Source: Octopus bimaculoides (taxonomy: Eukaryota). Taken from it: a stretch of DNA of 35,883 nt. Below, piece after piece: positions 9,571 through 29,885 of the stretch. The notes beneath the pieces are model-generated. The model searched no databases and had not been told where the DNA came from. It was given only the letters and a program-made list of their open reading frames with translations. Made by a program: the position numbers and the translations under genes. Positions within the stretch are counted from its first letter, which is position 1. The number at the start of each line of letters is the position of its first letter. The stretch spans positions 56,162,867-56,198,749 of the forward strand of contig NC_068987.1 of assembly GCF_001194135.2 (NCBI RefSeq), written 5' to 3'.

Positions 9571-9601
<31 letters not shown>

Positions 9602-9810: not shown

Positions 9811-9814
<4 letters not shown>

Positions 9815-9839
9815 GTGATCGTATATAATTGTGTTTCAG

Positions 9840-9950
9840 TCAGCTACGGATCAACATCTCCAAGATTACTGGTCAAAGTGTTAGTATTTCTCAGTATTGC
9901 TCTACTGAGTGCAGCCAATTCAGATGATGAATGTACGAAGACTGATTCAG
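9840..9950 (+). CDS. Coding exon A (phase 1-1) of an uncharacterised secreted protein; encodes the signal peptide
   Basis: Acceptor ttgtgtttcag| and consensus donor CAG|gtaagc; 111 nt. Only one frame is open: xSYGSTSPRLLVKVLVFLSIALLSAANSDDECTKTDS, with a hydrophobic core and an A-N-S/D cleavage-like site. It is an island of complex sequence inside microsatellites. Confidence 0.75.
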
Positions 9951-10029
9951 GTAAGCTGAGCCCTCCTCCTCTCTTACTCTCTCTTGTCTACCTATGTAAT
10001 AATCTCTATAGAGAATTTCTTTAATGTAA

Positions 10030-10161
10030 TTTATTTTCTGCCTTTTTCTCTCACTCTCTCTCTCTCTCTCACTCTTCTTCGCTATCTCTATCTCTGTATC
10101 TCACTCATTGACTCACTCTTCCTATATATATACCTATGTGTGTGTCCTTGTGTGTGTGCTT

Positions 10162-10235
<74 letters not shown>

Positions 10236-10376
10236 GTTCTCATTTTGTCCGTCTCACTCAAATGCTCATGTTTTGAAAACGTTTCACCATTACAAATATA
10301 TATGCACTCTCACATACATACAAATACACATACATATATACATAAATGCATGCAGGCATAGATAGATAGATGGATG

Positions 10377-10423
<47 letters not shown>

Positions 10424-10495
10424 GGATGGATGGATGGATGGATGGATGGATGGATGGATGGATGGATGGATGGATGGATGGATAGATAGATAGAT

Positions 10496-10532
<37 letters not shown>

Positions 10533-10679
10533 GCAGATATAAATATATACATGCATACCTAAATAGATGTATATAAGAGTGCATATAAATCCTTACTTAA
10601 ATATGAATTAATGCATTTATACATACGTACATATATATACATATATATAAATACACACACGCATACACACACACGCACG

Positions 10680-10739
<60 letters not shown>

Positions 10740-10854
10740 TATATACATATTCATATATACATATATACATACATATATAAATTTATATTTATACATACAT
10801 ACATGTATATATACATACATGTATATATACATACATATATATCCAAACACATGC

Positions 10855-10909
<55 letters not shown>

Positions 10910-11000
10910 TGCTTACATACATGCATACATACACTCGCACAATCATACACATATGAATACATACATACATATATACATACATACATGCATACATTTATAG
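10030..11000. repeat. Compound microsatellite block downstream of exon A (CT, GT, GATA, GGAT, AC, AT, ATAC)
   Basis: Direct reading. Confidence 0.9.
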
Positions 11001-11778
11001 ACATATCTACCTCTAATATATTTGTATTTACGTAATGCCTCACAATTTATTACATCACCTCGACTTTCTAGCAGAACACGTTCTTAGCTCCACATGGTAT
11101 CAGGTGCAAAGTCTAAAATCGCACGAACAGAACAAACCAAGCAGTCTTTGTGGTAATCTTTGAATATTGGATAAGTTATTGCATTGAGGCTTAAACTAAC
11201 GTCTTGTTGAAGCATGAAATATTTGGGATTAATCAAAGTAATATACTGCACAACGCTGTTTTTCAACACAGTAATGCATTGCATTATATAAGTAGAACGC
11301 AACACTATATAGCTCTACAATGTTCCAGTTACTGCATTAACCTTTTGTTGTTTTTTTTGGTTTTTGTTTTTGTTTGTTTTTGTTTTGTTTTTTTGCTTAT
11401 TTATTTTGGGTTGTTTCAGTCATTTGAGAAGGGTTATGGTCGAACAAATCGCCCCCCAGTGCTTATTCTTTTAAGTCTTGAGCTTATTCTATGCCGAATC
11501 GCTGTGTTGCGGAGGCAGAAACAAACCAACATACATACATACATACAAACATACATACATACATACATACATACATACATACATACTGACCATGTAACAT
11601 CTCTGCTCGTAAGTTACCCCATCATTTCGTTTTTGTCTTGCTATTACATGTTTTATTATGGACTCCCTGAAGAGAAATAAATGAGGAACCCCAACAGCTT
11701 TTTCTTCTTTGTGAAACATATGTAGGAATTAAAGGAACTTTTATTAACATGCATTTTTGCTCCATTTATTATTATACA

Positions 11779-12089
11779 GGAGTGGCTGTGTGGTAAGTAG
11801 CTCGCTTACCAACCACATGGTTCCGGGTTCAGTCCCACTGCGTGGCACCTTGGGCAAGTGTCTTCTACTATAGCCTCGGGCCGACCAAAGCCTTGTGAGT
11901 GGATTTGGTAGACGGAAACTGAAAGAAGCCCGTCGTATATATGTATATATATATGTATGTGTGTGTATATGTTTGTGTGTCTGTGATTGTCCCACCCAAC
12001 ATCACTTGACAACCGATGGTGGTGTGTTTATGTCCCCGTAACTTAGCGGTTCGGCAAAAGAGATCGATAGAATAAGTACTAGGCATCCA
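11779..12089 (+). mobile_element. tRNA-derived SINE (family D), runs into gap
   Basis: ggagtggctgtgtggtaag (A box) ... ggttcagtcccactgcgtggcaccttgggcaagtgtcttctactatagcctcgggccgaccaaagccttgtgagtggatttggtagacggaaactgaaagaagccc, an internal AT/GT tract, then cttagcggttcggcaaaagag. Confidence 0.9.
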
Positions 12090-12959
12090 NNNNNNNNNNN
12101 NNNNNNNNNNNNNNNNNNNNNNNNNNNNNNNNNNNNNNNNNNNNNNNNNNNNNNNNNNNNNNNNNNNNNNNNNNNNNNNNNNNNNNNNNNNNNNNNNNNN
12201 NNNNNNNNNNNNNNNNNNNNNNNNNNNNNNNNNNNNNNNNNNNNNNNNNNNNNNNNNNNNNNNNNNNNNNNNNNNNNNNNNNNNNNNNNNNNNNNNNNNN
12301 NNNNNNNNNNNNNNNNNNNNNNNNNNNNNNNNNNNNNNNNNNNNNNNNNNNNNNNNNNNNNNNNNNNNNNNNNNNNNNNNNNNNNNNNNNNNNNNNNNNN
12401 NNNNNNNNNNNNNNNNNNNNNNNNNNNNNNNNNNNNNNNNNNNNNNNNNNNNNNNNNNNNNNNNNNNNNNNNNNNNNNNNNNNNNNNNNNNNNNNNNNNN
12501 NNNNNNNNNNNNNNNNNNNNNNNNNNNNNNNNNNNNNNNNNNNNNNNNNNNNNNNNNNNNNNNNNNNNNNNNNNNNNNNNNNNNNNNNNNNNNNNNNNNN
12601 NNNNNNNNNNNNNNNNNNNNNNNNNNNNNNNNNNNNNNNNNNNNNNNNNNNNNNNNNNNNNNNNNNNNNNNNNNNNNNNNNNNNNNNNNNNNNNNNNNNN
12701 NNNNNNNNNNNNNNNNNNNNNNNNNNNNNNNNNNNNNNNNNNNNNNNNNNNNNNNNNNNNNNNNNNNNNNNNNNNNNNNNNNNNNNNNNNNNNNNNNNNN
12801 NNNNNNNNNNNNNNNNNNNNNNNNNNNNNNNNNNNNNNNNNNNNNNNNNNNNNNNNNNNNNNNNNNNNNNNNNNNNNNNNNNNNNNNNNNNNNNNNNNNN
12901 NNNNNNNNNNNNNNNNNNNNNNNNNNNNNNNNTATATATATATATATATATATATATAT

Positions 12960-13285
12960 TCTTTTACTTTTTTTACTTGCTTCAGTCATTTGACTGCGGC
13001 CATGCTGGAGCACTGCCTCTTATTCGAACAAATCGACCCCAGGACTTATTTTTTGTAAGCCTAGTACTTATTTTATCGGTGGAGGGACAAACACAGACAC
13101 ACAAATACATTTATGTGTGAATGTGTATACATTGGGCTTCTTTTAGTTTCCGTTTACCAAATCCACTCACAATGCTTTCGTCGACCCGAGGCTATAATGG
13201 AAGATACTTGCCCAAGGTACCACGCAGTTGGACTGAACCTGGAACCATGAGGTTGGGAGAAAGCTTCTTACCACACAGCCACTCC
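12960..13285 (-). mobile_element. SINE family D, minus strand, internally deleted
   Basis: Reverse complement of the 11779 copy head, plus the tail tcttttacttgcttcagtcatttgactgcggccatgctggagcactgcc. Confidence 0.9.
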
Positions 13286-13334
13286 TGTGCGTGTATATAC
13301 ATATATATAGATACATATATATGTGTATGAATGT

Positions 13335-13450
13335 ATGTATATATATATACGACAGGATTCTACACAATTTCCTTCTGTCAGATTCTCTCCCTTGCCCATT
13401 GTGCTGCACAGTGCGACTAAACCCGAAACTACATGGTTGCCAGGCGAACG
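13335..13450 (-). mobile_element. Degenerate family D SINE head fragment
   Basis: Reverse complement gcaaccatgtagtttcgggtttagtcgcactgtgcagcacaatgggcaag...gacagaaggaaattgtgtagaatcctgtc resembles the D head. Confidence 0.5.
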
Positions 13451-13874
13451 TCTGTGTCAAAGGGATCTAGCCTTGTCTTACGCTTCCTTATACACGCTCT
13501 GTCTGAGAATTCCGCGAAAGATACACGAACCTATGGAATTCTCATTCATGCGCGAATATTATGGGTGCGTGTGGTTATATGTATGTGAGTGTATATGAGA
13601 ATACGAGTGCATGGGGTGTAGAAAGGAAAAGAAAAAAAGAAGAGCTTGTGTTCGTTTCTAAAATATTAAGTTAGGTCCTGTTTTGTTTCGCTTTCTGTAT
13701 GTATTGTATGAGCTATTCAACTGTAGTATCCAACCATTTGAAACTTGGACTATAAAACGAGTCCCCCTCACAGTTTCACTCATGTACCTTTGGGTATACA
13801 GGAATACAGGAATACAGTTTTAATGGTAGTTATCTGTCGTGCAATTTTAATTTAAATCGTACTATATATGTGCA

Positions 13875-14284
13875 GAGGTGGCTCTGTGGTAAGAAGTTTG
13901 CTTCTCAACCACATGGCTCTTGATTCAGTCCCTCTGCGTGGAACCTTGGGCAAGTGTCTCCTATTATAGCCTCGGGCCGACCAAAGCCTTGTGAGTGGAT
14001 TTGGTAGACTGAAACTGAAAGAAGCCTGTCTTTTAATATATATCTATATTTATGGGTGTGTGTTTTTGTGCCTGTGTCCCCCCCCCACTCCCACCGCTCG
14101 GTGTAGGTGTGTTTACGTCCTCATAACTTAACAGTTCGGCAAAGAGACCAATAGAATAAATACCAAGCTTTTTAAAAATATAATTATTGGGTTCAATTCA
14201 TTCGACTAAGAATTCTTCAAGGCGGTGCCCCAGTATGGCCGTAGCCAAATGGTTGAAACAAGTTAAGAATAAAAGAAAAGATAA
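13875..14284 (+). mobile_element. SINE family D, near full length
   Basis: Same head, core and tail (ttcttcaaggcggtgccccagtatggccg...tgaaacaagttaagaataaaag) as the other D copies. Confidence 0.9.
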
Positions 14285-14590
14285 CAGATATAATTCCATA
14301 TATATCTTTTATGTTGGGTGTAGTGTTAACATATTTAATAAGGAATTTTGCTGTGCTTTCTTTTCTTTGTCCCTTTAGGTTAAAAGCTATGTTTGCTTGT
14401 TTGAGTTTTTGTACAGTTTGAACATCTAGTTAGGCTTTCACTGACCGAAACATAACCGTTCATCGACATAATTTTGATATAACATCGCATTTCTTTCTAA
14501 CGGAAAACTAACAATTTCTTATATGTTGTTAACAACTATTTTAATGATGTGATTTTTGTGTGTGTGTGTTTGTTTCTAATCTCGCTCTAG

Positions 14591-14762
14591 AATCTTCATG
14601 TTGTGATATCAGCGCAGAGTTACGAGACAAATGGTATTTTTCTGGCGGCAACAAAACCAATTTCTTGCGAATACGCCAACGTGTTATGGTCACCTACGAT
14701 TCAGCAAATGGTAAAGTCAGATACAAATGTGAAGAAAAGAAAAATAATGTTTTCCTAATCAG
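14591..14762 (+). CDS. Coding exon B (phase 1-2) of the same gene
   Basis: Acceptor ttctaatctcgctctag| and donor AG|gtaagt; 172 nt. Encodes (E)SSCCDISAELRDKWYFSGGNKTNFLRIRQRVMVTYDSANGKVRYKCEEKKNNVFLI(R), in frame with exon A. Confidence 0.85.
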
Positions 14763-16883
14763 GTAAGTTACCAATGATTTAAAATATTCATCTGTTTAGC
14801 TACTCGTTACTTAGATTTTACAGCTTTGAAAAATTGAGGTATTTGTGAATTAGCTGTTTTTGGTCATAGACACAGTTCTATTTAAGAAACACACGTTAAC
14901 TAAACGTTTAGCCTTTTGCTCAGTAGTCTGACATCTAAACGGCTATTGGAGATTAGTGCAGATCCGACTAGCTGCGGATCTCCAATAAATGTCATTAGTA
15001 CATAAACACAACTTCAAAATAATTGAACCCACCTTGATATGCAAATACATTATATTTCTATATTCTGTGAAGACGTTCTTTTTTGGTAATGCTTGACGCT
15101 TGTTTTCAAAATCAATAAACCTACGTAGTCAAATTTATGCTCTTTTGTTATAAATTTTGAGATTAAATCTACCGTCAAAGTTCTTATTTACATTTTTCTT
15201 TTAACTTTAATTCTTTGAATTGTCTAGCCAATTTACGTTTTAATCTCCCCAAATAATTTCCCATTTAAATATAAAATGTTGCCAACACCATGATACTAAT
15301 CTTTGAACAGATCACAAACACCGTCTTCTCGTCAAAGTTTGATTCAGTTATGTGTATTCTTTGAGGTATGCATATCGTTCTTAACAGTTCGTAGCTTACT
15401 GAAGTTGTTGATGCTGTTCATATTGGATTACTGCTTATTAGACCCAAGTTGGCCTTGATCGATCACAACTATGATCAAAGGTAGCTCATCTATGCAGACA
15501 TTTGAAAGGCATAGCATACCTTGGAAAAAATTATTTAAAGTGTTCCTTTTGAAGATAGCAAGATTCAATTTTAGGGAAATTTAGCCATCATTACTATCAT
15601 GTAGTCGAGTGAATATTTAGAGACTCCCTTGTTGGTTCAAATGCATTATGTTATAGCTATAGGAAAGATACATTTGTGCAGTCAGCCAAATACAATGATA
15701 AACACTACTCTTTGAATATATATGTTTATATATGTAACTCCTATTTCATTTTAGTATTTGGAAAATAGAATTTATAATTCGCTCCCATCTGTTTGAATCG
15801 CAATTGTTTAGGCCTATAGGATGCAGTGCCGTCGGACTGCTAACTGAGTTTTTTGTTAGTTTGTATCATAACACTATAGTTGTAGTCTGATCATAGCCAA
15901 GACACTTAACACATTCGACGTCCAAACTAATCAAGTTTTAAATAGAGCTCCCTGTCTCTGAGAAATGGAAAAAGATTTTTTAGCAGTATTTTGTTAGCTT
16001 GTAAAGCTTAGCTCAAATTTTTGTATTATGAATGTAACTTGTGGAGCAGTGGATGTGCATCCCTTTTCCCATATAAACATGGGGCCTGAGAAAGGTTCAC
16101 ATATGTACTGTCTTATTGACGACAGGTATTTGAACTATGACTTTTAAAAAACCAGTGTCTTACACAAAGATGTAATGAAACTCTCAGCAGCAGACACAAA
16201 TTCACAGCATATACAATCTGTTTATCCAATAGTGAAGCAAATGCTAACTTAATGTAGGAAGAACGATGAATTTTATGAATCGAGATTAAATTTGTATCGA
16301 ATTAATAAAAAAAACATACAAAATCAAGTAAGGCAGCTCAAAACTAAAAGAAAAAAAGAAAAGAAAAGAAAATTCTTCTTGTTTATCCAATATTTTATCC
16401 ATTCGGTTATATTTCTCCTCTAGAGCGAGAAGCCCTAATTTCTTAACTGAAAATATTTTTTTTTTAAATTCCGAGCGGAACTTTGCAACTGTGCTACAGT
16501 TCTCTGTAGAATAGCTTTGTTCAAAACATAAGGTAACGTATAAACATTATGACTCCCCTGAGACAAACAGATCCGCGATAACTCATGTTGAAAGATCATA
16601 TCGGTTACCAACTTAAGAAACGTAACCTTTTCAAACAACTCAACTGACCACAGATAAACGGTAAGAGATAAAAACACTGGTTTGCCCGCTGGCTTCGTTA
16701 CAGATTATTTAATACTTCAGCATCTTTGCAAGTTTTATTTTCATATTAAGATGTGTCTTAACTCTAACGACTTATCTTGGGCATCTGCGTTAATAATCAC
16801 AAACAAAAATCGTTCTAAATTTTTCCCGACTATTCTTGTTTTTGAGTCTTTTTCCTTAGCTTTCTCTTCTGCTTGTATATATC

Positions 16884-17015
16884 TCTCTCTCTCTCTCTCT
16901 CTCTCTCAATCTCTCTCCCCTTTCTCTCTCTCTCTTTCTCTCCTCTCCTTCTCTCTCTCTCCCCTCTCTTTCTCTCCCCCTCTCTCTTTCTCTCTCTCAC
17001 TCTCTCTATTTCTCT

Positions 17016-17092
<77 letters not shown>
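16884..17092. repeat. Long (CT)n microsatellite
   Basis: Direct reading. Confidence 0.95.
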
Positions 17093-17099
<7 letters not shown>

Positions 17100-17277
17100 C
17101 TATTTCTCTCCATATGTCTTTGTATATGTAGTTATGTGGTGTATGAAAGATTGATTTATATAAAGTTTTGTATATTTGCATAAATAAATGTATTTATAGC
17201 TTTCTGTCTTTCTTTATGTATTTGTGTATGTTTTTATGCATTTATGCATGTATTTATGTCTTTCTTTATGTATATAC

Positions 17278-17279
<2 letters not shown>

Positions 17280-17325
<46 letters not shown>

Positions 17326-17344
17326 GTATATACGAATGCGTGTT

Positions 17345-17420
<76 letters not shown>
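17280..17420. repeat. (AT)n-(ATGT)n-(GT)n compound microsatellite
   Basis: Direct reading. Confidence 0.95.
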
Positions 17421-17422
<2 letters not shown>

Positions 17423-17429
17423 AAAGTGC

Positions 17430-17595
17430 AGGAATTGTTGTGCAGTTAAATATTTTGCTTAGCAACTAATTAGTTTTGGGTTCGACCTCAATTCGCGGAA
17501 CGTTGAGAAAGAGTCTTCTACCGTAGCTTCAACTTCACCAAGACCTTATGAGTTAAATATAAATATGGTAGATGACAACTGTGCAGAAACCCACT
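17430..17595 (+). mobile_element. Old, degenerate family D-like SINE head
   Basis: gggttcgacc (B box-like), gagtcttctaccgtagc, agaccttatgagt and tggtagatgacaactgtgcagaaaccc align loosely to the D consensus. Confidence 0.5.
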
Positions 17596-17929
17596 TGGAA
17601 ATCAGTACAAGTTCATGAGTAGTTGGCTTAATCCATTTCCTGATTTAACAGCAACATCTGGCCCTTGGGGTCATAAGTGATGAAATAACAAAATAGCTCT
17701 GTTTCTCCCGCAAGACTTGGAGGTCCTTAAAAGGAACACGAATGCTACTCTTCACCTCTGACAAAGCTATTAGCTCTGCATAGCCGTATGGTTCGAGTAA
17801 TTATTTGGCATAATTGCATTTCACAGCAGTTTGCTTCCTACTAACATCCATTATGTATTAGTAGCCCTTCTATTAATATTGTTAATATATGTGTGTGTAT
17901 GTGTTTATGTATGTATACACACAGATGGA

Positions 17930-17971
<42 letters not shown>

Positions 17972-18052
17972 NNNNNNNNNNGTGTGTGTGTGTGTGTATG
18001 TGTGTGTATGTATGTATGTATGTATATATATATATATATATAAATGAGTAAC

Positions 18053-18384
18053 AGAGGTGTATAAGTATCAATTCGTTACGGCCGTTTCGAGCGACATCAT
18101 TACAAAGAAAACCGTTCTCATCAGATGACCGCATAGACTTCAAGCATAAAGGACAAGTCAAATATTTAAACATATTCATAGCATCAATAGATAGCAAATA
18201 TTTACAATGATTCCGCTGCTAATTGATTTAGCAGAATCATTAAATATCTAACTTGTCCTTTATGCTTGAGGTGTATGCGGTCATCTAATGAGAACGGTCT
18301 CCTTTATAATGATGTAATGCTTTCATTGATCAATTAAAGGAGTCGCTCGAAACAGCCGTAAAGAATTGACACTTATACATCTTT
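18053..18384. mobile_element. Imperfect ~330-bp foldback (MITE-like) element
   Basis: Left arm gtgtataagtatcaattcgttacggccgtttcgagcgac...gttctcatcagatgaccgcata...agcataaaggacaagt is mirrored in reverse complement at 18241-18384. There is a central hairpin at 18206-18241. Confidence 0.8.
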
Positions 18385-19036
18385 CTTACTCATATTTTAC
18401 TCACCTACCCTANNNNNNNNNNNNNNNNNNNNNNNNNNNNNNNNNNNNNNNNNNNNNNNNNNNNNNNNNNNNNNNNNNNNNNNNNNNNNNNNNNNNNNNN
18501 NNNNNNNNNNNNNNNNNNNNNNNNNNNNNNNNNNNNNNNNNNNNNNNNNNNNNNNNNNNNNNNNNNNNNNNNNNNNNNNNNNNNNNNNNNNNNNNNNNNN
18601 NNNNNNNNNNNNNNNNNNNNNNNNNNNNNNNNNNNNNNNNNNNNNNNNNNNNNNNNNNNNNNNNNNNNNNNNNNNNNNNNNNNNNNNNNNNNNNNNNNNN
18701 NNNNNNNNNNNNNNNNNNNNNNNNNNNNNNNNNNNNNNNNNNNNNNNNNNNNNNNNNNNNNNNNNNNNNNNNNNNNNNNNNNNNNNNNNNNNNNNNNNNN
18801 NNNNNNNNNNNNNNNNNNNNNNNNNNNNNNNNNNNNNNNNNNNNNNNNNNNNNNNNNNNNNNNNNNNNNNNNNNNNNNNNNNNNNNNNNNNNNNNNNNNN
18901 NNNNNNNNNNNNNNNNNNNNNNNNNNNNNNNNNNNNNNNNNNNNNNNNNNNNNNNNNNNNNNNNNNNNNNNNNNNNNNNNNNNNNNNNNNNNNNNNNNNN
19001 NNNNNNNNNNNNNNNNNNNNNNNNNNNNNNNNNNNN

Positions 19037-19090
<54 letters not shown>

Positions 19091-19092
19091 AA

Positions 19093-19449: not shown

Positions 19450-19572
19450 ATATATATATATATATCACGGTGGTGCACCAGCATTACCGCAGCCACTTGG
19501 CTGAAACACATAAATAAATATATATTTGAAGGTTTGGAGGTGATGTACAGAAATTATATAGAAAAAAATTAA

Positions 19573-20603: not shown

Positions 20604-20766
20604 GTTCGGCAAAAGAGATCGGTAGAATAAGTACCAAGCGAAAGATATAAGTAGTGGAGTCGATTCATCTGAGTAAAAATTCTTCAAGACGGTGTCCCAG
20701 CATGACCGCAATCTAATGACTGAAACAAGTAAAAGATAAAAAAATAAACTATATATATATATATAT
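20604..20766 (+). repeat. SINE D tail identical to 19303-19465
   Basis: 163 nt exact match including the (TA) run; begins exactly at the end of an N gap. Confidence 0.9.
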
Positions 20767-20827
20767 GCATATGTACATATATACACATGCATATACATAT
20801 ATCCATACACACATACACACACATGTC

Positions 20828-21227
20828 TTTTACCTTTTACTTGCTTCAATCATTTGAGTGCGGCCATGCTGGGGCACTACCTTCGAGAAATTTTCGTCAA
20901 ATGTATCGACCCCAGGACCTATTTGTTTCTTAAGCCTGGTTCTTATTCTATCGGCTTCTTTTGCCGAACCACTAAGGTTACTGGGACATAAACACACCAG
21001 CACTAGTTGTCAAGCGGTGGTGGGGGACAAACACAGACACAAAGACACACAGATGTATATATACATATATACGAGGTGCGTCTTTCATTTTCCGTCAACC
21101 AAATCCACTCACAAGGCTTTGGTCGGCCCGAGGCTACAGTAGAACTTTCGAAAGGCACCACGCAGTGGGATTGAATCCAGAATCATGTGGTTGGGAAGCA
21201 AGCTTCTTATCACATTGCCACACCTGC
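20828..21227 (-). mobile_element. SINE family D, minus strand, full length
   Basis: Reverse complement of the D head, core and tail: aaatccactcacaaggctttggtcggcccgaggcta, ggcaccacgcagtggg. Confidence 0.9.
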
Positions 21228-21364
21228 GTATATATNNNNNNNNNNNNNNNNNNNNNNNNNNNNNNNNNNNNNNNNNNNNNNNNNNNNNNNNNNNNNNNNN
21301 NNNNNNNNNNNNNNNNNNNNNNNNNNNNNNNNNNNNNNNNNNNNNNNNNNNNNNNNNNNNNNNN

Positions 21365-21692
21365 ATGGGCCAGTGGTTAGGGCAGCGGACTCGCGGTCAT
21401 AGTTTCGATTCCCAGACCGGGCGTTGTGAGTGTTTATTGAGCGAAAACACCTAAAGCTCCACGAGGCTCCGGCAGGTGATGATGACGAACCCTGCTGTAC
21501 TCTTCCACCACAACTTTCTCTCACTCTTACTTCCTGTTCCTGTTGTGCCTGTAATTCAAAGGGTCAGCCTTGTCACACTGTGTCACGCTGAATATGCCCC
21601 AGAACTACGTTAAGTAGGCTGTTCCGTTGATCGGATCAACTGGAACCCTCGACGTCGTAAGCGACGGAGTGCCAACAACAACAACAACAACA
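21365..21692 (+). mobile_element. tRNA-derived SINE (family C) with (AAC)n tail
   Basis: agtggttagggcagcggactcgcggtc...tttcgattcccagacc head, a 3' module shared with family B, and the end cgtcgtaagcgacggagtgcc followed by (aac)n. Confidence 0.85.
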
Positions 21693-22589
21693 TGTATGTA
21701 TGTATGTATGTATGTGTGTATGTGTTATGTATTGTTTTGGTGCATACATTCACGAATAATATAATTATAATTAGAGGTGCGTTAATATATTTTCATTAAA
21801 TTTTTCGTCACACATTCTTTGACCTTTCTGAAACAACTATTTATTGCAACCGGTCTACGTCTTCTCTTTTGCTTCCTTGTTGGTTAATGCTGCCAAGAAT
21901 CATTGCGTGTTGTTATCGTCGTCATCGTCGTTGTTGTTCTTGCTGCATGAGTGTGTATGCAAGAAAGCTTGTGTCTCGTTTTTCTTTTGGGAACATATAA
22001 AAATAAGATAGATATTATAAATTGTTTTTATAAATCTTATAAATCTGATTTCTAGTTTGTTAAGTTCTTGTCAACAACGAATCTTGTATTTCATACAGGT
22101 AGAAATTTCACATCATATCATGTAGTTTTAATTCATTATTTATGATACCGTGTATTAAATCGACAAATGTGTAGAGTTTTTAGTACATAGCAGAACATTC
22201 AATAATAATACAAATGCCAACATAATCCGAATTTCAATAAATTTGCATTAAATTTTTCGTCACACATTCTGTCACCTCTTCTGATCAGAAATCTTTTGTA
22301 TTCTATAACACACTTACAGCTTCAACGCACGATAGCATCGTAAGAATAAAATAAAACTACGTGGAACGTAAAAAAAGAAAACGACTATTTTTAAAACTTT
22401 AACATTCAATATAAATTATCTTAACCACGAAATCCATCACAAATCCGATTATTCGGTTTAACGCTTCTCACGTGAAATGAACAATCTTTGCATTAACGTA
22501 GCTATTGAGGGTGATTTTAAATTGCATCCAGTAGTAGGGGGGGGGGCTCTGGTTTGGGAGTTCCAGGATTCTGAGAAATGTGGAACCAC

Positions 22590-23070
22590 CTCTTAACCAT
22601 TATTGTTCCTGTGATTCGAAGATGTAGCATTTGGTCGGGCTTCAGCTACGGGTAAATTAGCAAGTCAGTCGGGTAGATGAAGTTCGTTAGCCTGGGTAAC
22701 CTATTTAGAGGAAGGAAATCTCTGATTCCAAACCTCCGCTACCTTACTGTCATACCCAGTCTTAGAGATGGTTTCGAGAGTAAAACCTGAGGAAAAATCG
22801 GGAGACGGAGCCCCTGAGGCAGTTCGACGCTATCTAAAACCTCATCCCGGCAACTCCTACGATGACGCTGGTGCCACATTGTAACGGCCGGGCTGCTCCT
22901 TTAGATCCATCAATGACATGGAGAGAGGGGATACGTTGCGTGGACAACAACCTGTCCTCCATTCAATAATAGCGCAAGGATTGGATCTTATCGAACACCC
23001 TATACTGGAGAAATATTAGCCACAGCCATCGCTGTTCCAGGAGGGCAGGCAACTAGGACCTTCAACGACA
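22590..23070 (+). mobile_element. RTE-clade LINE 5' leader fragment (degenerate)
   Basis: gaaggaaatctctgattccaaacctccgctacctt...gagtaaaacctgaggaaaaatcgggagacggagcccctgaggcagt resembles the conserved 5' leader of RTE LINEs as I recall it. It is a GC-richer island with no long ORF. Confidence 0.55.
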
Positions 23071-23385
23071 GATGAATGACATGAGTTTTAGCGTAAAATT
23101 TACCAGCAGGACTTGAACTTAACTATTTCAGTTCAGACATAATCACTACCATTCATGAGACCATTATATTATTTCCTATTGATAATTTCCAGTTTCCTAT
23201 CGAACTGGCCACAACCAATATATCAATGAATCCATGAAGTATTAAGACAATATCAGTATAAGCTTATATATTTGTATTTTACTACATGTATGTGTTTATA
23301 TATATGCCTGTTTGTGTATGTATGTGCGTTTATGTGTCTGTGTGCGTGTGCATGCGTATGCGTGTGTGCGCACGTGTGTATGTAT

Positions 23386-23775
23386 GTCATTAGTGAGTTT
23401 CATTTCAAGATTTCTTACGAATAGAGAAAGAGCTGGTTTCTCACCTAGATCCAAGGTTCCTTAATTTCAACAACATCAACAGGGTATATTTTTATGTATG
23501 TATAAGTGCAGATTTGTATATTTTGTTTTATGTATGTATCCTCATGCACGTAGTTGTATGACTATACATGCTCATATATACTTAAATGATAAACTGCTGG
23601 AAAGTTTTATAGATTTTTACAGTTCCAGTGATGGCTTGGATCAGTTGTCTTCGAATCAGCTTTCTCCTTTCTGGTTTGAGAAGCCTAATTTTTCAAGATT
23701 GGTATTTAGGCAGTGTGTTATATATCCCAGTGCCCCAATAATTACAGGTATAAACCTCAATCTGGATAGAGTAGC
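23386..23775 (-). mobile_element. 5'-truncated R4/Dong-like (RLE) LINE: ORF C-terminus and 3' UTR
   Basis: Minus translation RFIPVIIGALGYITHCLNTNLEKLGFS(fs)KPERRKLIRRQLIQAITGTVKIYKTFQQFII*, typical of the RLE C-terminus. The 3' UTR matches 35698-35862. Confidence 0.8.
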
Positions 23776-23777
23776 TG

Positions 23778-23892
23778 CATGTATGTATGTATGTATGTAT
23801 GTATGTATGTATGTATGTATGTATGCATGTATGTATGTATGCATGTATGTATGTGTGTATGTATGTATGTATGTATGTATGTATGTATGTAT
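23778..23892. repeat. (TATG)n microsatellite
   Basis: Direct reading. Confidence 0.95.
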
Positions 23893-24178
23893 CTGCTGTG
23901 TAAACAGGCATCGTGAATTAATTTTCGTTTCTGTTTTTCTTGTATTTCTCTTATACCTTTTCCTTCTCTTTGAGAAAGGACACAACCAGAAGCGTTAGAT
24001 CCTCTTATTTGATGTATTTATTTTCATTGGACTCACTCTTGCTATGTTGTTGTTTAGTTTAATATTTCTTCGCACTTTTTCTGCCACGTGTTTTGCTTCT
24101 CTGGTTTCATATCTCATTTGTTAGTTTGCCTCCTCATTGTCTCATAATCTTAACTCGTTTGTGCGTTTTTATCCATTA

Positions 24179-24225
<47 letters not shown>

Positions 24226-24242
24226 TACGCATATATATAATA

Positions 24243-24431
24243 TAGCGGTATTTCGTCTGCCGTTACGTTCTGAGTTCAAATTCCGCCGAGGTCGACTTTG
24301 CCTTTCATCCTTTCGGGGTCGATAAATTAAGTACCAGTTACGCACTGGGGTCGATGTAATCGACTTAATCCATTTGTCTGTCTTTGTTTGTCCCCTCTAT
24401 GTTTAGCCTCTTGTGGGCAATAAAGAAATAA
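24243..24431 (+). mobile_element. tRNA-derived SINE (family E), 5'-truncated, young-looking
   Basis: tagcggtatttcgtctgccgttacgttctgagttcaaattccgccgaggtcgactttgcctttcatcctttcggggtcgataaattaagtaccag...gggcaataaagaaata. Confidence 0.9.
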
Positions 24432-24457
24432 GATAGATATATGCATATATATATATT

Positions 24458-24495
<38 letters not shown>

Positions 24496-24794
24496 TATGA
24501 TTGTATCGTTTGTTCGCCCGGTTATTTGAAACGTGTGTACTATACTATTATTTTCACATATTCAACTTTCATTAAACTAAAATGCACCAGTCTAACGTTG
24601 CACTTCTACCGTCCGTCTTATCCCTTTTACTCATTTCCCTCTGAATCTAATGCCGCATCAATATTAACTGTTTTAGATGCATTTCTCGGATATAACGTTA
24701 TCGATCTCAACATTAGATCTCAGAGTTTATCCTTTGCGTTCGATATTCGTGTATGTATGTATGTATGTATGTATGTTTGTATCTGCGTGTATTG

Positions 24795-24825
<31 letters not shown>

Positions 24826-24951
24826 CATGCATACATACATGTATGTACACAAAATATACATATATGCGTATATATTATACCATGACAAAGATATAGAGAA
24901 TATCGCTTTATTGTATGTCTTTTTGTCTTCAATAATATATTTGCCAATAAA

Positions 24952-25002
<51 letters not shown>

Positions 25003-25107
25003 TCTCTTTCCCCCTTCCCTCTACCTCTCATTCTCTGATGCTTTCTTATCAAAATTTTTATTTTCAGTCTTTATTATATTTTATTTTTGTGTTTTTCTAA
25101 CCTACAG

Positions 25108-25211
25108 AAAGAAAGTGTATCGCCCTAACAAAGACGGAGTGTTGTGTTTGGGTTTTTCCTACTCTCGAAACAACAACAACAAACCCGAAAATACACTGGT
25201 TCGATATAATA
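25108..25211 (+). CDS. Coding exon C (phase 2-1) of the same gene
   Basis: Branch-like ctaac, pyrimidine tract and ctacag| acceptor; donor A|gtgagt; 104 nt. Encodes (R)KKVYRPNKDGVLCLGFSYSRNNNNKPENTLVRYN(S), phase-compatible with exons B and D. Confidence 0.85.
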
Positions 25212-25540
25212 GTGAGTATATATACGTGTGTGTGTGTGTATGTGTGTGTGTAAGTGTGTGAGTGTGTGTACGTGTGTGTGTGCGTGTGTGTGTGTTTGTA
25301 TTTTATATGATTTCTTGCAATTCACAGAAGAAAGGCTACGTATATGACCCAGCAATAAATCATTAATTATTCAATTGATTACATTTTCTGTATGTGTGTG
25401 TGTGTGTGTCTTATTTTATATGCTTTATTTGCACAGCAGTTTGGACAGTAATATCTTCAGGCATTATCTTATGTATGCTGGTGGAGAAAATGTGGAAAAG
25501 TAGAAGGTGAAAAAACAAAAGAGTAGAAGCTGATAATATT

Positions 25541-25670
25541 GGTTTCAAATTCTGGCCCAAGGCCTGGAAGACAGAGTCGACCTCAGCGAAATTTGAACTC
25601 AGAACGTAAAGAAGGACGAAATGTCGCTAAGCATTTTGCCCGGCATGCTAACGATTCTGCCAGCTCGCCA
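25541..25670 (-). mobile_element. SINE family E, minus strand, internally deleted
   Basis: Reverse complement tggcgagctggcagaatcgttagcatgccgggcaaaatgcttagcgacatttcg...gagttcaaatttcgctgaggtcgact. Confidence 0.85.
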
Positions 25671-26215
25671 ACTTAGAAGCAGAGACTACTGATAAGAAAG
25701 ACGTGTAGGAATGACATAAAAAGAAGGAAGAGTCAGAAAAATGGTAACGCGACCGGTGTACATCGAGTCGTATGACCCGATAAAAATTGCTCTATGTGGT
25801 TGTTTAACCTACAAAAAAATAGTAGTCAAATTTATTACAAGCCCTACATTTGTTGTCTTTAAAAAGGGATAGGAGAGAGTGGATGATGTATTGCCTGAAA
25901 AGATGATGGGATGGTTTTGATTGAATGCTCTGATCATAGGTTTACTTAAACAGAGCTTACGCTGAGGTATCCTGAACAACAATAAACCATATGGTCTTTC
26001 GTTTCTGTTTAAGATAGTAAGCTGTGACTCCCCGTCGAAATGGCGTCCATTTGCATAGTTTTTCATTATTGTTAATGCTAAGTTATGCGAACATGCAAGC
26101 TCTGAAGAGTGGAGACAATCTACTTGTGTAGCGAGTTGGTAAGTCGATAGTGCATCACCTCTCTTTTAATAACCCCAGGAAAACTTAAACATGTCAATAT
26201 TTATATATTCTTAAA

Positions 26216-26430
26216 GCGGCGAGCTAGCATAGTTGTTAGCACGCCGGTTAGAATGCTTAGAGGCATTTCGCCCGTCTTCGTGTTCTGAGCTCAAATTCCG
26301 CCGAGGCCGACTTCGCCTTTCATCCTTTAGGGAGTCGATAAAATAAGTATCAGTTGAGCACTGGGGCCATGCAATCGACTTACCCCTCCCCCTATAATTG
26401 CTAACCTTCTAACAAAATTTGAAACCAATA
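26216..26430 (+). mobile_element. SINE family E, full length
   Basis: gcggcgagctagcatagttgttagcacgccgg...ttctgagctcaaattccgccgaggccgacttcgcctttcatcc...tttgaaaccaata. Confidence 0.9.
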
Positions 26431-27536
26431 TTTATATACTATTAACTCTCAAATAAATGGTTCTCGAACTAGGAGATGGGTGTTTCTATGAAGAGGAATG
26501 TGTTGGTTTTGTAGTAAAGATGCACTTAGCTGGGGATAGATTGATATATAAATCAATTGGCTTCACGTGGGAAAAAAAAACAATAAGAAAACAGAGCAAG
26601 TTCAAAGTTATCTCTAGTTATCTATGTAATATTATTTGTTTATTTCACTGTTTCTCAGTAAATTGAGATTACGTGTGAGGAGTATCAAATGATCTCTGTA
26701 AGTCAAAAGGACTAATCATCCATTGATGAGTCCCACTGATTACGTTAAATGAAGCAAAAATAATTCAGACATTTGATGTCTGATTTTATTTTATCTTTGT
26801 GGGAAATAAATAGTTGTTCAGCATTATATGCGAGCACTTATTTATGTGTGTAATAGAATTTGGAGCGGCGGTCCATTTAATCTTCATATGGTTGTATGTT
26901 GAAAACGTATTTTTAAAAAAATAACATTCTTTGATAACATAAGCGATAAAATTGTTGAGTTTTGAACAGAACAAATATTGATTTTTACTGAAAATATCTC
27001 ATGAAGTTTACTGTGCCAGGGCAAATAATTATTTTAATACAACAAAATGGCCGGCGGTTGTTCTAGTAAAATACGATTACATCCAAAAAGAAATACTTGT
27101 AAAAGTTTATCTCATATAGCAGTCGGGCAATTTTGCATCAGCAGATATATTTACTTCATTAAATTCTATTTCTTTAGTAAAGCATATTCTGATTTGCTAT
27201 AAATATCTCCTGAGTTCACAAATGCATTTTTCTCGCTGTTAGGATTAATCACTTATTTTGCCATCTGCCAGTTTAACTGGGTTTTCTTTAGATTTCGCAA
27301 TAAAGTCGACAATAAAAAGAGCTAGTATTTCATTCAAAACATCAACAGGTTCATATTGTCACTAGCACTACGTTCTGTCCCTGAAAATAAAAACTCTTAG
27401 CTCTTACATATATTCTAAGTTGGACATAGGCATTATGAAAAAGTACAAATCATCATTGTAAGAACTGCATGAATAATAAGTGTTCCTTAATTTTCAATAC
27501 GAGGTGAGCTTGAAATAAGTGACTGACACCAATGTA

Positions 27537-28235
27537 CGAGGGAGTGTCAAAAATTATACGCACTCTTGTTTTTTCAATGTATTTACACAAAAGCAGGAGA
27601 TAAACAAGTACATCATTTTCCTAAATATTCTTCTTCTTTTTCGATGCACTTAGTCCAGCGGTCCACAAGAAGGTTTTCGGTTAGTCGTGCAACCATTTAC
27701 ACACTCCTTCCTTCACATTTTCATCCGTAGGAAATCGACAGCCTCGTAAACTATCTGTAAGCGGTCCAACGATATGATAGTCGGAAGGGGCGAGATCTGG
27801 GCTGTAGGCAGGGTGTTCCAGCACCTCAAAACCCAATTGCTTATTGGTTTCAACGTCTGGGCGGCCGTGTGTGGATGTGCATTGTCATGCAACAACAAAA
27901 CTTTCTTCGACAATAGGCTTCGGCGTTTGGTGCGAATTGCTGGCTTTGATTTGTTGGACAACAAAGCACTGTATCTTGCACTGTTGATCGTACACCCCCT
28001 TTTCCAGAGAAATCGGATTACTGCTCTTTGTTCTTCTTTGGTACACGTTGCTAGTGGAGCGGCCATGCTTGCACAGCAAAGCCAAAAAGCCAAAAAGAAA
28101 AATAGTGCGATCAGGCTCAAACTTCGATCACGTGACCCAATAGTACCAACTATAAACGCGCGTGAGCAGAAAGCAGTGTGACAATAATAAAGATTTGTTA
28201 TGGTGAAGGTGTGTATAATTTTTGAATTCCTCTTG
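27537..28235 (-). mobile_element. Internally deleted mariner (DD34D) transposon
   Basis: TA-flanked imperfect TIRs (cgagggagtgtcaaaaattatacgcac vs rc caagaggaattcaaaaattatacacac). MAAPLATCTKEEQRAVIRFLW is fused directly to TINSARY...LLLHDNAHPH...(fs)EHPAYSPDLAPSDYH. Confidence 0.9.
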
Positions 28236-28262
28236 TATTATAATAGGAAAGCAATTATTATG

Positions 28263-28635
28263 TGGGTGGTGCTTTGACAGAAACATTGGAGCGTCAGGCA
28301 AAATGCTTAGCGGCATTTCGTCCGCTTTTATGTTCTGAATTCAAATTCTGTCGAGGTCGACTTTGCATTTCATCCTTTCGAGGTCGATAAAATAAGTACC
28401 AGCTGATTGTTGGGGTCGATCTAATCGACCTATCCCTCCTCCGAAATTGTTAGCCGTGTACAAAACTTAAAGCAATATTTCTTCCCACCTTTTAAGTTCT
28501 GAGTTCACAGCTCTCCAAAGTCAATTTTGGCTTACACCCTCCCTAAATCGATCCAATCAAATACCAGTGATATTCTGAGGTTGATGTAATTTTCCTCCAA
28601 AATGTTTGGCCTTATTCCTGTTAGAAACGATTATT
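28263..28635 (+). mobile_element. Two tandem family E SINE copies (second degenerate and 5'-truncated, from ~28490)
   Basis: aaatgcttagcggcatttcg...gtcgactttgcatttcatcctttcgaggtcgataaaataagtaccag, then a second aagttctgagttcacag...gtcaattttggcttacaccc...aataccagtg. Confidence 0.8.
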
Positions 28636-28699
28636 GTTATCAGGAAACGTTTGGAAAAAAAATCGACTCTTCCTTCAGGAAGGTATTGTGAATAAAAAA

Positions 28700-28815
28700 G
28701 GGGATCTATCCATTTCTTGCTCTAAATATAGGTTTGATAAATTAACGGCCCATGAGTAACCCAAATAGATAGGCAACTGGAGTCCATATTTAGGGCAAGA
28801 AATGGATAATCTCCC
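28700..28815. mobile_element. Small MITE-like inverted repeat element
   Basis: tatccatttcttgctctaaatatagg ... ccatatttagggcaagaaatggata forms ~25-bp inverted arms; no clear target-site duplication. Confidence 0.6.
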
Positions 28816-29163
28816 ACTGTAAGGTTTTAATCTTAATCTTCAATGCTGATTTCCTCTTATTTAAAATTCTTCATCTTTTTGTACACATTACTTTGTGAAT
28901 GGTGTCAATCTATAGTAGGTTACAGGGAGTTAACTACCTGTAACTTACTGTGGATTATACACAACCTGCACCTCTCCTTCGTATACAACTCAATGACGTG
29001 TTGCTTCTATTCGAAAACCAATTATATTTTTCTACGAGAAAGGACAGGAAAAAGAATTACTGCAGAGCAAGAATTATTCAACCATGAGCAGTTTGAACGA
29101 CCTAAGTCAGTTAATAAAAAGTTATGCTTCACAACTCATGTGATTAAAGAATTTTGCTAAATA

Positions 29164-29692
29164 CAGTACCGGGCCAAATATCCGGCAAGCTAGGTGACCG
29201 GAAGTGTCCTGGATTTCTGGATTTTTCGCTTTTCTGGAGTCAACCTGAATATATACTTAAAATATAAAATAAAGTATGGAAAGTAAGGAACTAAATTGAA
29301 TTGAACAGATTCAAATTAATACATTTCTAAAGTAGGTTCTGTTTGATATTTATTAATCCACTTAAAATTCTTAGAATATAACATACCGTACCATGTATTC
29401 CGTATAATGTTTATAGGATGAAAATTAAATAAAAAAAAATGGTGAAGAATATGAATATATTTAATTGACACAAGTACAAATTAATACAACTGTAAAGTAG
29501 AATATGTTTAATCCTTATCAATCTACATAAAAAAAAAGTAAAGCACAAAACTAGTTTTAACACACCACATGCAAATTAATCAATTTCAAAAAGAGGGTCT
29601 GTTTGCTATGTTTACAGAGTATAGTATATTGGAAGATACTGTGCAGTACTCCCGAATTTCTGGAAGCCAGATATGAGTTTCGTCCGGTAGTG
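29164..29692. mobile_element. Degenerate pogo/Tigger-like MITE
   Basis: TA|CAGTACCGGGCCAAATATCCGG at the left. At the right, ccagatatgagtttcgtccggtagtg|ca is a loose reverse complement. The interior is AT-rich. Confidence 0.4.
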
Positions 29693-29756
29693 CATCTTGA
29701 ATGAAGATTTATCTTCTAAAATATACAACAATGTTTTCTTTGTCTTTATTTTGCAG

Positions 29757-29885
29757 GTATGAGACAAAGTTTCCATATCCTCAGTCCTGAACTGATTCCA
29801 CGTGATCAACCTGTTAGCATTGACACCCAATGTGATTTATTGAAGACTGGTGGAACGAAGCCAACTGCTGCTCTCCAACGATCAG
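29757..29885 (+). CDS. Coding exon D (phase 1-1) of the same gene
   Basis: Acceptor tttctttgtctttattttgcag| and donor CAG|gtatat; 129 nt. Encodes (S)MRQSFHILSPELIPRDQPVSIDTQCDLLKTGGTKPTAALQRS, in frame with exon C. Confidence 0.8.

What the first reader, a model, noticed from the sequence alone, without database searches (positions are those of the whole stretch)
9840..29885. Hidden four-exon gene for an uncharacterised secreted six-cysteine protein, invisible in the ORF track
Four short exons spread over 20 kb have canonical splice sites and chain in phase (1-1, 1-2, 2-1, 1-1) into 516 nt with no stop: xSYGSTSPRLLVKVLVFLSIALLSAANS|DDECTKTDSESSCCDISAELRDKWYFSGGNKTNFLRIRQRVMVTYDSANGKVRYKCEEKKNNVFLIRKKVYRPNKDGVLCLGFSYSRNNNNKPENTLVRYNSMRQSFHILSPELIPRDQPVSIDTQCDLLKTGGTKPTAALQRS. 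The signal peptide, six Cys, one N-glycosylation sequon (NKT) and the phase-1 boundary after the domain suggest a modular extracellular protein. The C-x8-W...C...VLCLGF...C...L-x-R pattern reminds me of beta-rich invertebrate extracellular repeats (DUF7042/7043/7044- or APCDD1-like), but that assignment is unverified. The ATG exon and later exons are not found here.
Basis: partly seen in the sequence, partly recalled or inferred. Interest (0 to 1): 0.75.

Follow-up and report, generated by a model that had tools for sequence, protein, structure and literature searches.

The report
Annotated octopus secreted-protein gene, exons 2–5
The four exons are real and correctly spliced, but they are the middle of an already annotated Octopus bimaculoides gene (LOC106875689) for a secreted two-domain protein of unknown function that is conserved across molluscs.

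Summary
Exons 9840-9950, 14591-14762, 25108-25211 and 29757-29885 (+) all have AG/GT borders and chain into 516 nt with one open frame. That 516-nt chain occurs exactly in an intron-free transcript contig, so all three predicted junctions are confirmed. Every N gap lies inside an intron.

The window is Octopus bimaculoides chromosome CM046607.1. The peptide equals residues 23-193 of RefSeq XP_052825661.1, "uncharacterized protein LOC106875689" (322 aa). So the gene is annotated, not hidden.

The full gene has 8 coding exons over 92.9 kb. The ATG exon lies 28.7 kb before the window and exons 6-8 lie 15-28 kb after it.

The protein has a signal-like N-terminus and two homologous ~130-aa domains, each with four invariant Cys and each encoded by a three-exon unit with matching phases.

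Orthologues occur in cephalopods, gastropods, bivalves and a chiton, and all are unnamed. They reach Pfam DUF7043/DUF7044 just above threshold; the octopus protein falls just below.

A high-confidence domain model (pLDDT 92) has no significant PDB neighbour. APCDD1 and ZP readings are not supported. Function is unknown; an extracellular binding role is inferred.

The parts
1..9839 (+). 3' part of intron 1 of LOC106875689. The intron is 38,484 nt in the assembly; the ATG exon lies at window-equivalent -28708..-28645, outside the window.
   Evidence: Window maps at 100% identity to L006 38710-74592. Exon map rebuilt from L006 equals the mRNA CDS.
9840..9950 (+). Coding exon 2 (111 nt, phase 1 to 1), residues 22-59. 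It holds the hydrophobic signal-like segment LLVKVLVFLSIALLSAA and the first cephalopod-specific Cys (C53).
   Evidence: AG/GT borders. Exact match to mRNA L007 344-454. The five most hydrophobic 15-residue windows of the protein all lie at residues 30-49.
9951..14590 (+). Intron 2 (4,640 nt as assembled), containing the N gap 12090-12932 and SINE-like repeat copies.
14591..14762 (+). Coding exon 3 (172 nt, phase 1 to 2), residues 59-116. First exon of domain 1, with C62/C63, the LRDKW motif, the NKT sequon and C105.
   Evidence: 76% identical to the cuttlefish-group orthologue P0001.
14763..25107 (+). Intron 3 (10,345 nt as assembled), containing N gaps 17972-17981, 18413-19036, 19784-20603 and 21236-21364.
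25108..25211 (+). Coding exon 4 (104 nt, phase 2 to 1), residues 116-151. Second exon of domain 1, with VLCLGFSY (C129) and the near-invariant Arg (R148).
   Evidence: domain alignment.
25212..29756 (+). Intron 4 (4,545 nt, no gap).
29757..29885 (+). Coding exon 5 (129 nt, phase 1 to 1), residues 151-194. Third exon of domain 1, with C176. It ends at the boundary between the two domains.
29886..35883 (+). 5' part of intron 5 (21,386 nt as assembled). Exons 6-8, which encode domain 2, lie at window-equivalent 51272-51437, 62055-62158 and 64080-64198, outside the window.

Best explanation
The window lies wholly inside one gene, Octopus bimaculoides LOC106875689 (XP_052825661.1, 322 aa).

Shown:
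- The gene is transcribed and spliced exactly as predicted.
- It has 8 GT-AG coding exons over about 93 kb.
- The protein has a hydrophobic N-terminal segment followed by two homologous ~130-residue domains.
- Each domain has four invariant Cys plus a near-invariant Trp and Arg.
- Each domain is encoded by a three-exon unit with matching intron phases (1-2, 2-1, 1-x). This indicates an old tandem duplication of a three-exon module.
- Orthologues exist across Mollusca.
- Domain 1 is predicted with high confidence as nine successive antiparallel strands plus a short helix.

Inferred:
- The hydrophobic segment acts as a signal peptide, cleaved near SAANS/DDE.
- The protein is N-glycosylated (N79, N230) and holds two disulfides per domain, plus one extra cephalopod-specific N-terminal pair.
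- It is released as a soluble extracellular protein, since no second hydrophobic segment stands out.
- Each domain most likely works as a small disulfide-locked beta-meander (calycin-like barrel) binding module for an extracellular partner, possibly a small hydrophobic ligand. I put that functional step at about 0.3.
For: - Exon structure and translation.
- Exact 516-nt match in transcript contig L007.
- 100% identity to P0002 residues 23-193, and its NCBI name and accession.
- Genomic placement on CM046607.1, where this is the only called gene in 113 kb.
- Internal repeat: the window's domain 1 matches domain 2 of P0001 at E=9e-10.
- Equal exon lengths and phases in the two modules: 172/104/129 against 166/104/119 nt.
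- Four invariant Cys plus W14 and R89 across 31 domain copies.
- Family range: 46 representatives out of 1.84 billion. Named members are molluscs, with weak single-domain relatives in nemerteans.
- Pfam DUF7043/DUF7044 matched in 19 and 18 of 31 domain copies.
- Hydropathy, sequons and Cys positions.
- AF2 domain model with pLDDT 92.2 and pTM 0.86.
- The nearest Foldseek hits, none significant, are up-and-down barrels of the avidin/streptavidin and FABP type.
- A mussel relative carries the same domain type on a mucin-like stalk ahead of a hydrophobic, TM-like C-terminal segment. That fits an extracellular recognition or binding module.
Against: - No signal-peptide predictor was available. The annotated N-terminus places 29 residues before the hydrophobic core, which is long for a signal peptide. 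A start at Met20 would look more classical.
- The octopus protein itself is below the Pfam cut-off: 23.3 bits against 27.
- All Foldseek matches are non-significant (best E 0.14, TM<=0.46). The 'calycin-like' label therefore rests on strand order and the Trp/Arg pair, not on a demonstrated fold match.
- Pfam Lipocalin did not match any domain copy.
- No ligand, tissue or phenotype data exist.
- Model coordinates could not be inspected, so disulfide pairing and any cavity are unverified.
Confidence: 0.85

Rival explanations
1. The protein is a protein- or glycan-recognition, adhesion or matrix module rather than a carrier of small hydrophobic ligands. The two domains would act as surface-binding heads.
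For: The mussel relative P0041 (678 aa) displays two DUF7043-type domains on Ser/Thr-rich mucin-like stalks, ending in a hydrophobic TM-like segment. That layout is typical of cell-surface recognition proteins. UniRef labels two orthologues 'ZP domain-containing'. No lipocalin, FABP or avidin match is significant.
Against: The octopus protein has no stalk and no other hydrophobic segment among its most hydrophobic windows. The nearest folds, though non-significant, are ligand-binding barrels. No direct evidence favours either reading.
Confidence: 0.35
2. It is an APCDD1-like protein: two tandem beta-barrels that bind the lipid of Wnt and inhibit Wnt signalling.
For: There is an architectural analogy only. 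Both are extracellular, with two homologous beta-rich domains in tandem and intradomain disulfides. APCDD1's own nearest folds are also weak lipocalin/P2 matches (PMC10193966).
Against: - No Pfam APCDDC hit at E<=10 for the window peptide or P0001, nor at E<=1 in 31 domain copies.
- No PDB sequence hit at E<=10.
- No APCDD1 chain among the top 50 Foldseek hits for either model.
- The domains are ~130 residues, whereas ABD1 and ABD2 superpose over 160 C-alpha atoms.
- 8 family-conserved Cys against 12, and none assigned to an interdomain bond.
- No second hydrophobic segment among the most hydrophobic windows.
Confidence: 0.03
3. It is a zona-pellucida (ZP) module protein that polymerises into extracellular filaments, as the UniRef name of the Lottia and Pomacea orthologues suggests.
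For: UniRef names V3ZWK4 (Lottia) and A0A2T7PKR7 (Pomacea) 'ZP domain-containing protein'. The mature length is about 260 aa and there are eight conserved Cys, which superficially resembles a ZP module.
Against: - Pfam Zona_pellucida was not found in P0003 at E<=1, P0013 at E<=0.1, or any domain copy.
- The two halves are clear sequence repeats of each other, each with four Cys.
- No ZP structure appears in the Foldseek top 50.
- There is no C-terminal propeptide or hydrophobic tail.
Confidence: 0.03
4. It is a chance chain of open segments, or a dead pseudogene.
For: None beyond the general abundance of AG...GT-bounded open segments in AT-rich introns.
Against: An exact transcript exists. The protein is 59-68% identical in decapodiform cephalopods and 34-38% identical in other mollusc classes, with invariant Cys and Trp. 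The chance of an open 171-codon frame is 5e-6.
Confidence: 0.01

Closest known systems
NCBI RefSeq gene LOC106875689 (XP_052825661.1), Octopus bimaculoides, 'uncharacterized protein'. Orthologues of at least 90% identity: Octopus sinensis LOC115214146 (XP_036360984.1), Octopus vulgaris CAI9726403.1, Argonauta hians GAB1598382.1
   Same: It is the same locus. The window peptide is 100% identical to residues 23-193, and the exon coordinates match the model.
   Different: Nothing differs. The window simply lacks coding exon 1 and exons 6-8. An older 232-aa model of the same gene (A0A0L8GNI1) is incomplete.
Pfam DUF7043 (PF23070) and DUF7044 (PF23071), metazoan domains of unknown function
   Same: Orthologues pass the curated cut-off at 29-31 bits against 27. 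The match starts at the first invariant Cys and covers about the first two thirds of each ~130-aa domain.
   Different: The octopus protein scores below the cut-off (23.3 bits; the window part 13.8-14.6 bits). The profiles cover only about 65-70 of about 130 domain residues. No function or paper is attached to either family.
Calycin-type up-and-down beta-barrels (avidin/streptavidin, FABP/P2, lipocalins)
   Same: The predicted order is nine consecutive antiparallel strands, then a short helix, then a last strand. There is a conserved Trp in the first strand and a conserved Arg late in the domain. These folds top the Foldseek list. That the Trp/Arg pair resembles the calycin signature is my inference from general knowledge of the superfamily.
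   Different: No match is significant (E>=0.14, TM<=0.46). No Pfam Lipocalin hit was found. The four-Cys pattern and tandem layout are not calycin features.
APCDD1 (PMC10193966)
   Same: Both are extracellular, with two homologous disulfide-bonded beta-rich domains in tandem.
   Different: No sequence or Foldseek similarity was detected. The domains here are smaller, there are fewer Cys, no interdomain disulfide is conserved, and the protein appears soluble rather than membrane-anchored.

Membership tests
RefSeq gene model LOC106875689 / XP_052825661.1 | Identical protein sequence and the same genomic exons | tested here: met
   100% identity over 171 aa. Window equals CM046607.1 (L006 38710-74592) at 100%. 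The CDS rebuilt from 8 exons equals the mRNA.
Pfam DUF7044 (PF23071) / DUF7043 (PF23070) | Whole-protein score at or above the gathering cut-off of 27 bits | tested here: inconclusive
   The window peptide scores 13.8 bits and full P0002 scores 23.3 bits, both below the cut-off. Orthologues pass: P0001 29.6, P0003 29.7, P0004 29.7, P0005 30.8/30.0, P0006 29.1, P0008 30.6. Of 31 domain copies, 19 match DUF7043 and 18 match DUF7044 at E<=1. Membership therefore rests on orthology.
Pfam DUF7042 | Any match to the profile | tested here: not met
   DUF7042 was never listed.
APCDD1 family | Match to Pfam APCDDC, or sequence similarity to solved APCDD1 | tested here: not met
   No hit at E<=10 for the window peptide or P0001. 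No PDB sequence hit.
APCDD1 family | Two beta-barrels superposing over about 160 residues, 12 conserved Cys including an interdomain disulfide, and a single-pass membrane anchor (PMC10193966) | tested here: not met
   Domains are ~130 aa with 4+4 invariant Cys. The only hydrophobic segment found is N-terminal. No APCDD1 chain appears in the Foldseek top 50.
Zona pellucida (ZP) module | Match to Pfam Zona_pellucida, and a ZP-N/ZP-C immunoglobulin-like fold | tested here: not met
   No Pfam hit in P0003, P0013 or any domain copy. No ZP chain in the Foldseek top 50.
Lipocalin/calycin superfamily | Closed up-and-down beta-barrel with a significant structural match, and the strand-A Trp packing on a late Arg | tested here: inconclusive
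   The strand order fits, and W14 and R89 are near-invariant. But the best Foldseek hits (avidins, FABP1) have E>=0.39 and TM<=0.46, and Pfam Lipocalin does not match. Model coordinates could not be inspected.
Secreted protein (classical pathway) | Cleavable N-terminal signal peptide and no other membrane segment | not testable with these tools
   No SignalP was available. Hydropathy shows one strong segment at residues 30-49. Orthologues begin with short hydrophobic N-termini at the aligned position.

The most novel reading that the evidence does not exclude
The ~130-residue four-Cys domain (DUF7043/7044 type) could be an extracellular beta-barrel fold with no solved representative. It would be largely restricted to lophotrochozoans (molluscs and nemerteans) and would work as a tandem carrier or sensor for a hydrophobic ligand. 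That would make it a functional analogue, or a very remote relative, of APCDD1 and the lipocalins.
Probability: 0.15. Interest if true: 0.5.

Novelty: already known. Interest (0 to 1): 0.22.

Why it matters
As a gene find it adds nothing, because RefSeq already holds this exact model. The result does show that the first-stage reader can recover correct splice junctions and phases from raw sequence.

The residual interest is modest. This is a single, well conserved, mollusc-wide secreted protein family with a clean tandem-duplicated three-exon module. It has a high-confidence predicted fold, no significant neighbour in the PDB, and no literature. A structure or a ligand would give a function to two Pfam DUF families.

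Tried and rejected
- Searching the window for the ATG exon and for domain 2 by tblastn and exact 5-mers found nothing. Both lie outside the window.
- PDB sequence searches with the full-length and domain profiles gave only a chance TCR hit at E 0.55, then nothing.
- Foldseek with the full-length model (pLDDT 73.6) gave only noise. A single-domain model (pLDDT 92.2) still found no significant hit.
- The third word-indexed protein search, with the domain alignment, returned only two proteins and no named relative.
- Literature searches for DUF7042/3/4, LOC106875689, six orthologue identifiers and the four SRR run numbers all returned zero papers. The tissue of expression is therefore unknown.
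- Rfam found no RNA family in the window.
- The APCDD1, ZP and chance-ORF readings were considered and rejected; see the rival explanations.
- dN/dS was not attempted. The only DNA-level orthologue in hand is 68% identical at the protein level, so synonymous sites would be saturated.


Full report
**1. The observation**

The window is 35,883 nt with 35% G+C and ten N runs. At the stated coordinates there are four segments: 9840-9950, 14591-14762, 25108-25211 and 29757-29885. Each follows a pyrimidine-rich tract and an AG, and each is followed by GT. Joined, they give 516 nt. With the window's base composition a random codon is a stop 6.85% of the time. A run of 171 open codons therefore has a chance of about 5e-6.

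**2.

Gap 12090-12932 lies in the intron between the first and second window exons. Gaps 17972-17981, 18413-19036, 19784-20603 and 21236-21364 lie in the intron between the second and third. No gap touches an exon.

Continuity of the coding sequence does not depend on the assembly. L007 is an intron-free 2,246-nt contig assembled from the public run SRR32601320. It contains the spliced 516 nt exactly at positions 344-859 and encodes the full protein. Exon order, orientation and frame are thus confirmed by a transcript. The public chromosome record carries the same gaps, so intron lengths remain estimates.

**3. What it is**

A first protein search found one relative, P0001 (293 aa). It is 59% identical over 164 residues and colinear across all three junctions. 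It is encoded without interruption on 1.2-1.7 kb contigs from several sequencing runs.

Searching with P0001 then returned P0002, 'uncharacterized protein LOC106875689 [Octopus bimaculoides]', 322 aa. The window peptide is 100% identical to its residues 23-193. Its accession is XP_052825661.1. Orthologues of at least 90% identity are annotated in Octopus sinensis, Octopus vulgaris and Argonauta hians. P0001's cluster includes a Sepia (Acanthosepion) pharaonis protein.

The window maps at 100% identity to GCA_001194135.2 chromosome CM046607.1 (L006 38710-74592, about 56.16-56.20 Mb). LOC106875689 is the only called gene in the 113 kb fetched.

**4. Full gene structure**

Eight GT-AG coding exons, taken from L006, reproduce the mRNA CDS exactly.

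| Exon | Length (nt) | Position (window coordinates) |
|---|---|---|
| 1 (ATG) | 64 | -28708..-28645, outside the window |
| 2 | 111 | 9840-9950 |
| 3 | 172 | 14591-14762 |
| 4 | 104 | 25108-25211 |
| 5 | 129 | 29757-29885 |
| 6 | 166 | 51272-51437, outside the window |
| 7 | 104 | 62055-62158, outside the window |
| 8 | 119 (with stop) | 64080-64198, outside the window |

The introns are 38.5, 4.6, 10.3, 4.5, 21.4, 10.6 and 1.9 kb as assembled. The whole window is therefore intragenic, running from intron 1 to intron 5.

An in-frame stop precedes the ATG in the mRNA. The first 279 nt of the mRNA (5' UTR) have no match within the 10 kb upstream of exon 1. At least one further non-coding exon, or a gap, therefore lies upstream.

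**5. Protein anatomy**

The five most hydrophobic 15-residue windows all lie at residues 30-49 (LLVKVLVFLSIALLSAA). None lies elsewhere, so a second membrane segment is unlikely. Orthologues start with short hydrophobic N-termini at the aligned place.

Two homologous domains follow, at about residues 60-193 and 194-322. The window's domain 1 aligns to domain 2 of P0001 at E=9e-10.

In an alignment of 31 domain copies from 16 proteins, four Cys are invariant and one Trp and one Arg are nearly so. Sequons are at N79 (NKT, also present in P0001) and N230.

The two domains are encoded by exon triplets of 172/104/129 and 166/104/119 nt. Their phases are identical (1-2, 2-1, 1-x), and the introns fall at the same aligned residues: FLIR|K against FLFR|A, and YN|S against LN|S. 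This is a tandem duplication of a three-exon module. A genomic ORF from another cephalopod (P0007) shows homology starting at APGC and ending at FLMR. That matches the exon 6 borders.

**6. Family and distribution**

A profile search of 1.84 billion representatives found only 46 proteins at E<=1e-3 and 10 at E<=1e-30. Named members are all molluscs:

- Gastropods: Lymnaea, Pomacea, Elysia, Nucella, Babylonia, Lottia, Batillaria.
- Bivalves: Solemya, Pinctada, Saccostrea, Crassostrea, Mizuhopecten, Pecten, Potamilus, Mytilus.
- A chiton: Liolophura.
- Cephalopods.

Weak single-domain relatives occur in the nemerteans Tubulanus and Lineus. All are called 'uncharacterized' or 'hypothetical'.

Pfam places orthologues just above the cut-off in DUF7043 or DUF7044 (29-31 bits against 27). 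The octopus protein scores 23.3 bits and the window fragment 13.8 bits. Of the 31 domain copies, 19 match DUF7043 and 18 match DUF7044. No other family recurs. No paper mentions these DUFs, the locus or six orthologue identifiers.

**7. Fold**

The full-length AF2 model (6 sequences) had pLDDT 73.6 and gave only noise in Foldseek. A model of domain 1 alone, built on the 31-copy alignment, reached pLDDT 92.2 and pTM 0.86. It shows nine successive strands, a short helix before the last strand, and no low-confidence segment.

Foldseek against the PDB gave no hit at E<=0.001. The best was E 0.14, and TM-scores did not exceed 0.46. The list is dominated by avidin/streptavidin barrels, with FABP1 and levivirus coat proteins. 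PDB sequence searches were empty.

The domain therefore has no significant solved neighbour. The description 'calycin-like up-and-down barrel with a strand-A Trp and a late Arg' is my inference, not a demonstrated match. I could not inspect coordinates, so disulfide pairing and any cavity remain open.

**8. How it most likely works**

Shown: transcription, splicing, the ORF, conservation, the repeat structure and high-confidence beta structure.

Inferred:
- ER targeting by the hydrophobic segment, with cleavage near SAANS/DDE.
- N-glycosylation.
- Two disulfides per domain, plus a cephalopod-specific N-terminal pair.
- Release as a soluble extracellular protein.
- Binding of an extracellular partner by each barrel-like domain.

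The mussel relative P0041 carries two DUF7043-type domains on mucin-like stalks and ends in a hydrophobic, TM-like segment. That supports an extracellular recognition or binding role for the domain type. Whether the partner is a small hydrophobic ligand (about 0.3) or a protein or glycan (about 0.35) cannot be decided here.

**9. Comparison with known families**

- **APCDD1.** It shares only the general layout of two homologous disulfide-bonded beta domains outside the cell. It differs in domain size, Cys count (12, including an interdomain bond), membrane anchoring and every similarity test.
- **ZP module.** The UniRef label 'ZP domain-containing' on the Lottia and Pomacea orthologues is not reproduced by Pfam or Foldseek.
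- **DUF7043/7044.** Membership is borderline for this protein and is met by its orthologues.

**10. Verdict**

It is wrong on 'hidden' and unsupported on 'APCDD1-like'. The gene is already in RefSeq as an uncharacterised protein, so novelty is 'already known'. The residual interest is a mollusc-wide protein family with no function, no literature and no significant solved structural neighbour.

Noticed in passing
window 6994-7928 (-), split by N gap 7489-7695: Remnant of a Tc1/Sleeping-Beauty-type transposon in intron 1. ORF 7707-7928 matches the SB transposase HTH domain (PF25787, E 1.7e-14). ORF 6994-7194 looks like a transposase C-terminus by eye but had no Pfam hit.
   Followed up: partly
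window 30858-31646 (-), interrupted by N gap 31201-31377: An antisense ORF in intron 5 encodes C2H2 zinc fingers (PF00096, E 4e-8). It may be a ZNF gene fragment or part of a mobile element. No gene is called there in the public annotation.
   Followed up: partly
window 31835-32104 (+) and 27713-28120 (-): These look like mariner/DDE-type transposase fragments. The first gives a sub-threshold DDE_3 hit (23.3 bits against 28.6). The second has an HDNAHPH-like motif by eye but no Pfam hit.
   Followed up: partly
window 11777-12084, 13078-13298, 13864-14277, 19105-19443, 20826-21235: A dispersed 200-400 bp repeat (SINE-like) occurs in both orientations at 70-85% identity within introns 2 and 3. 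Several copies abut assembly gaps.
   Followed up: no
window 19303-19465 and 20604-20766: A 163-bp stretch is 100% identical on either side of N gap 19784-20603. The second copy starts right at the gap edge, and both end in a (TA)n run. This may be an assembly redundancy rather than a true duplication. It is intronic and has no effect on the CDS.
   Followed up: partly
window 30132-30767 vs L006 88519-89168: An inverted copy at 85.5% identity lies about 19 kb downstream in the same intron. It is probably another repeat family.
   Followed up: no
P0009 (Solemya velum KAL5006574.1, 823 aa): This model joins a complete two-domain family member (residues 8-287) to an MFS transporter segment (PF07690). 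It is probably a merged gene model rather than a true fusion.
   Followed up: no
The first word-indexed search, with the window peptide, did not list P0002 even though P0002 is 100% identical. P0002 appeared only when the cuttlefish-group orthologue was used as the query. A single null from that tool should not be read as 'unannotated'.
   Followed up: no
L007 1-279 (mRNA 5' UTR): The first 279 nt of the transcript contig have no match in the 10 kb upstream of the ATG exon in L006. At least one more 5' non-coding exon lies further upstream or in a gap.
   Followed up: no
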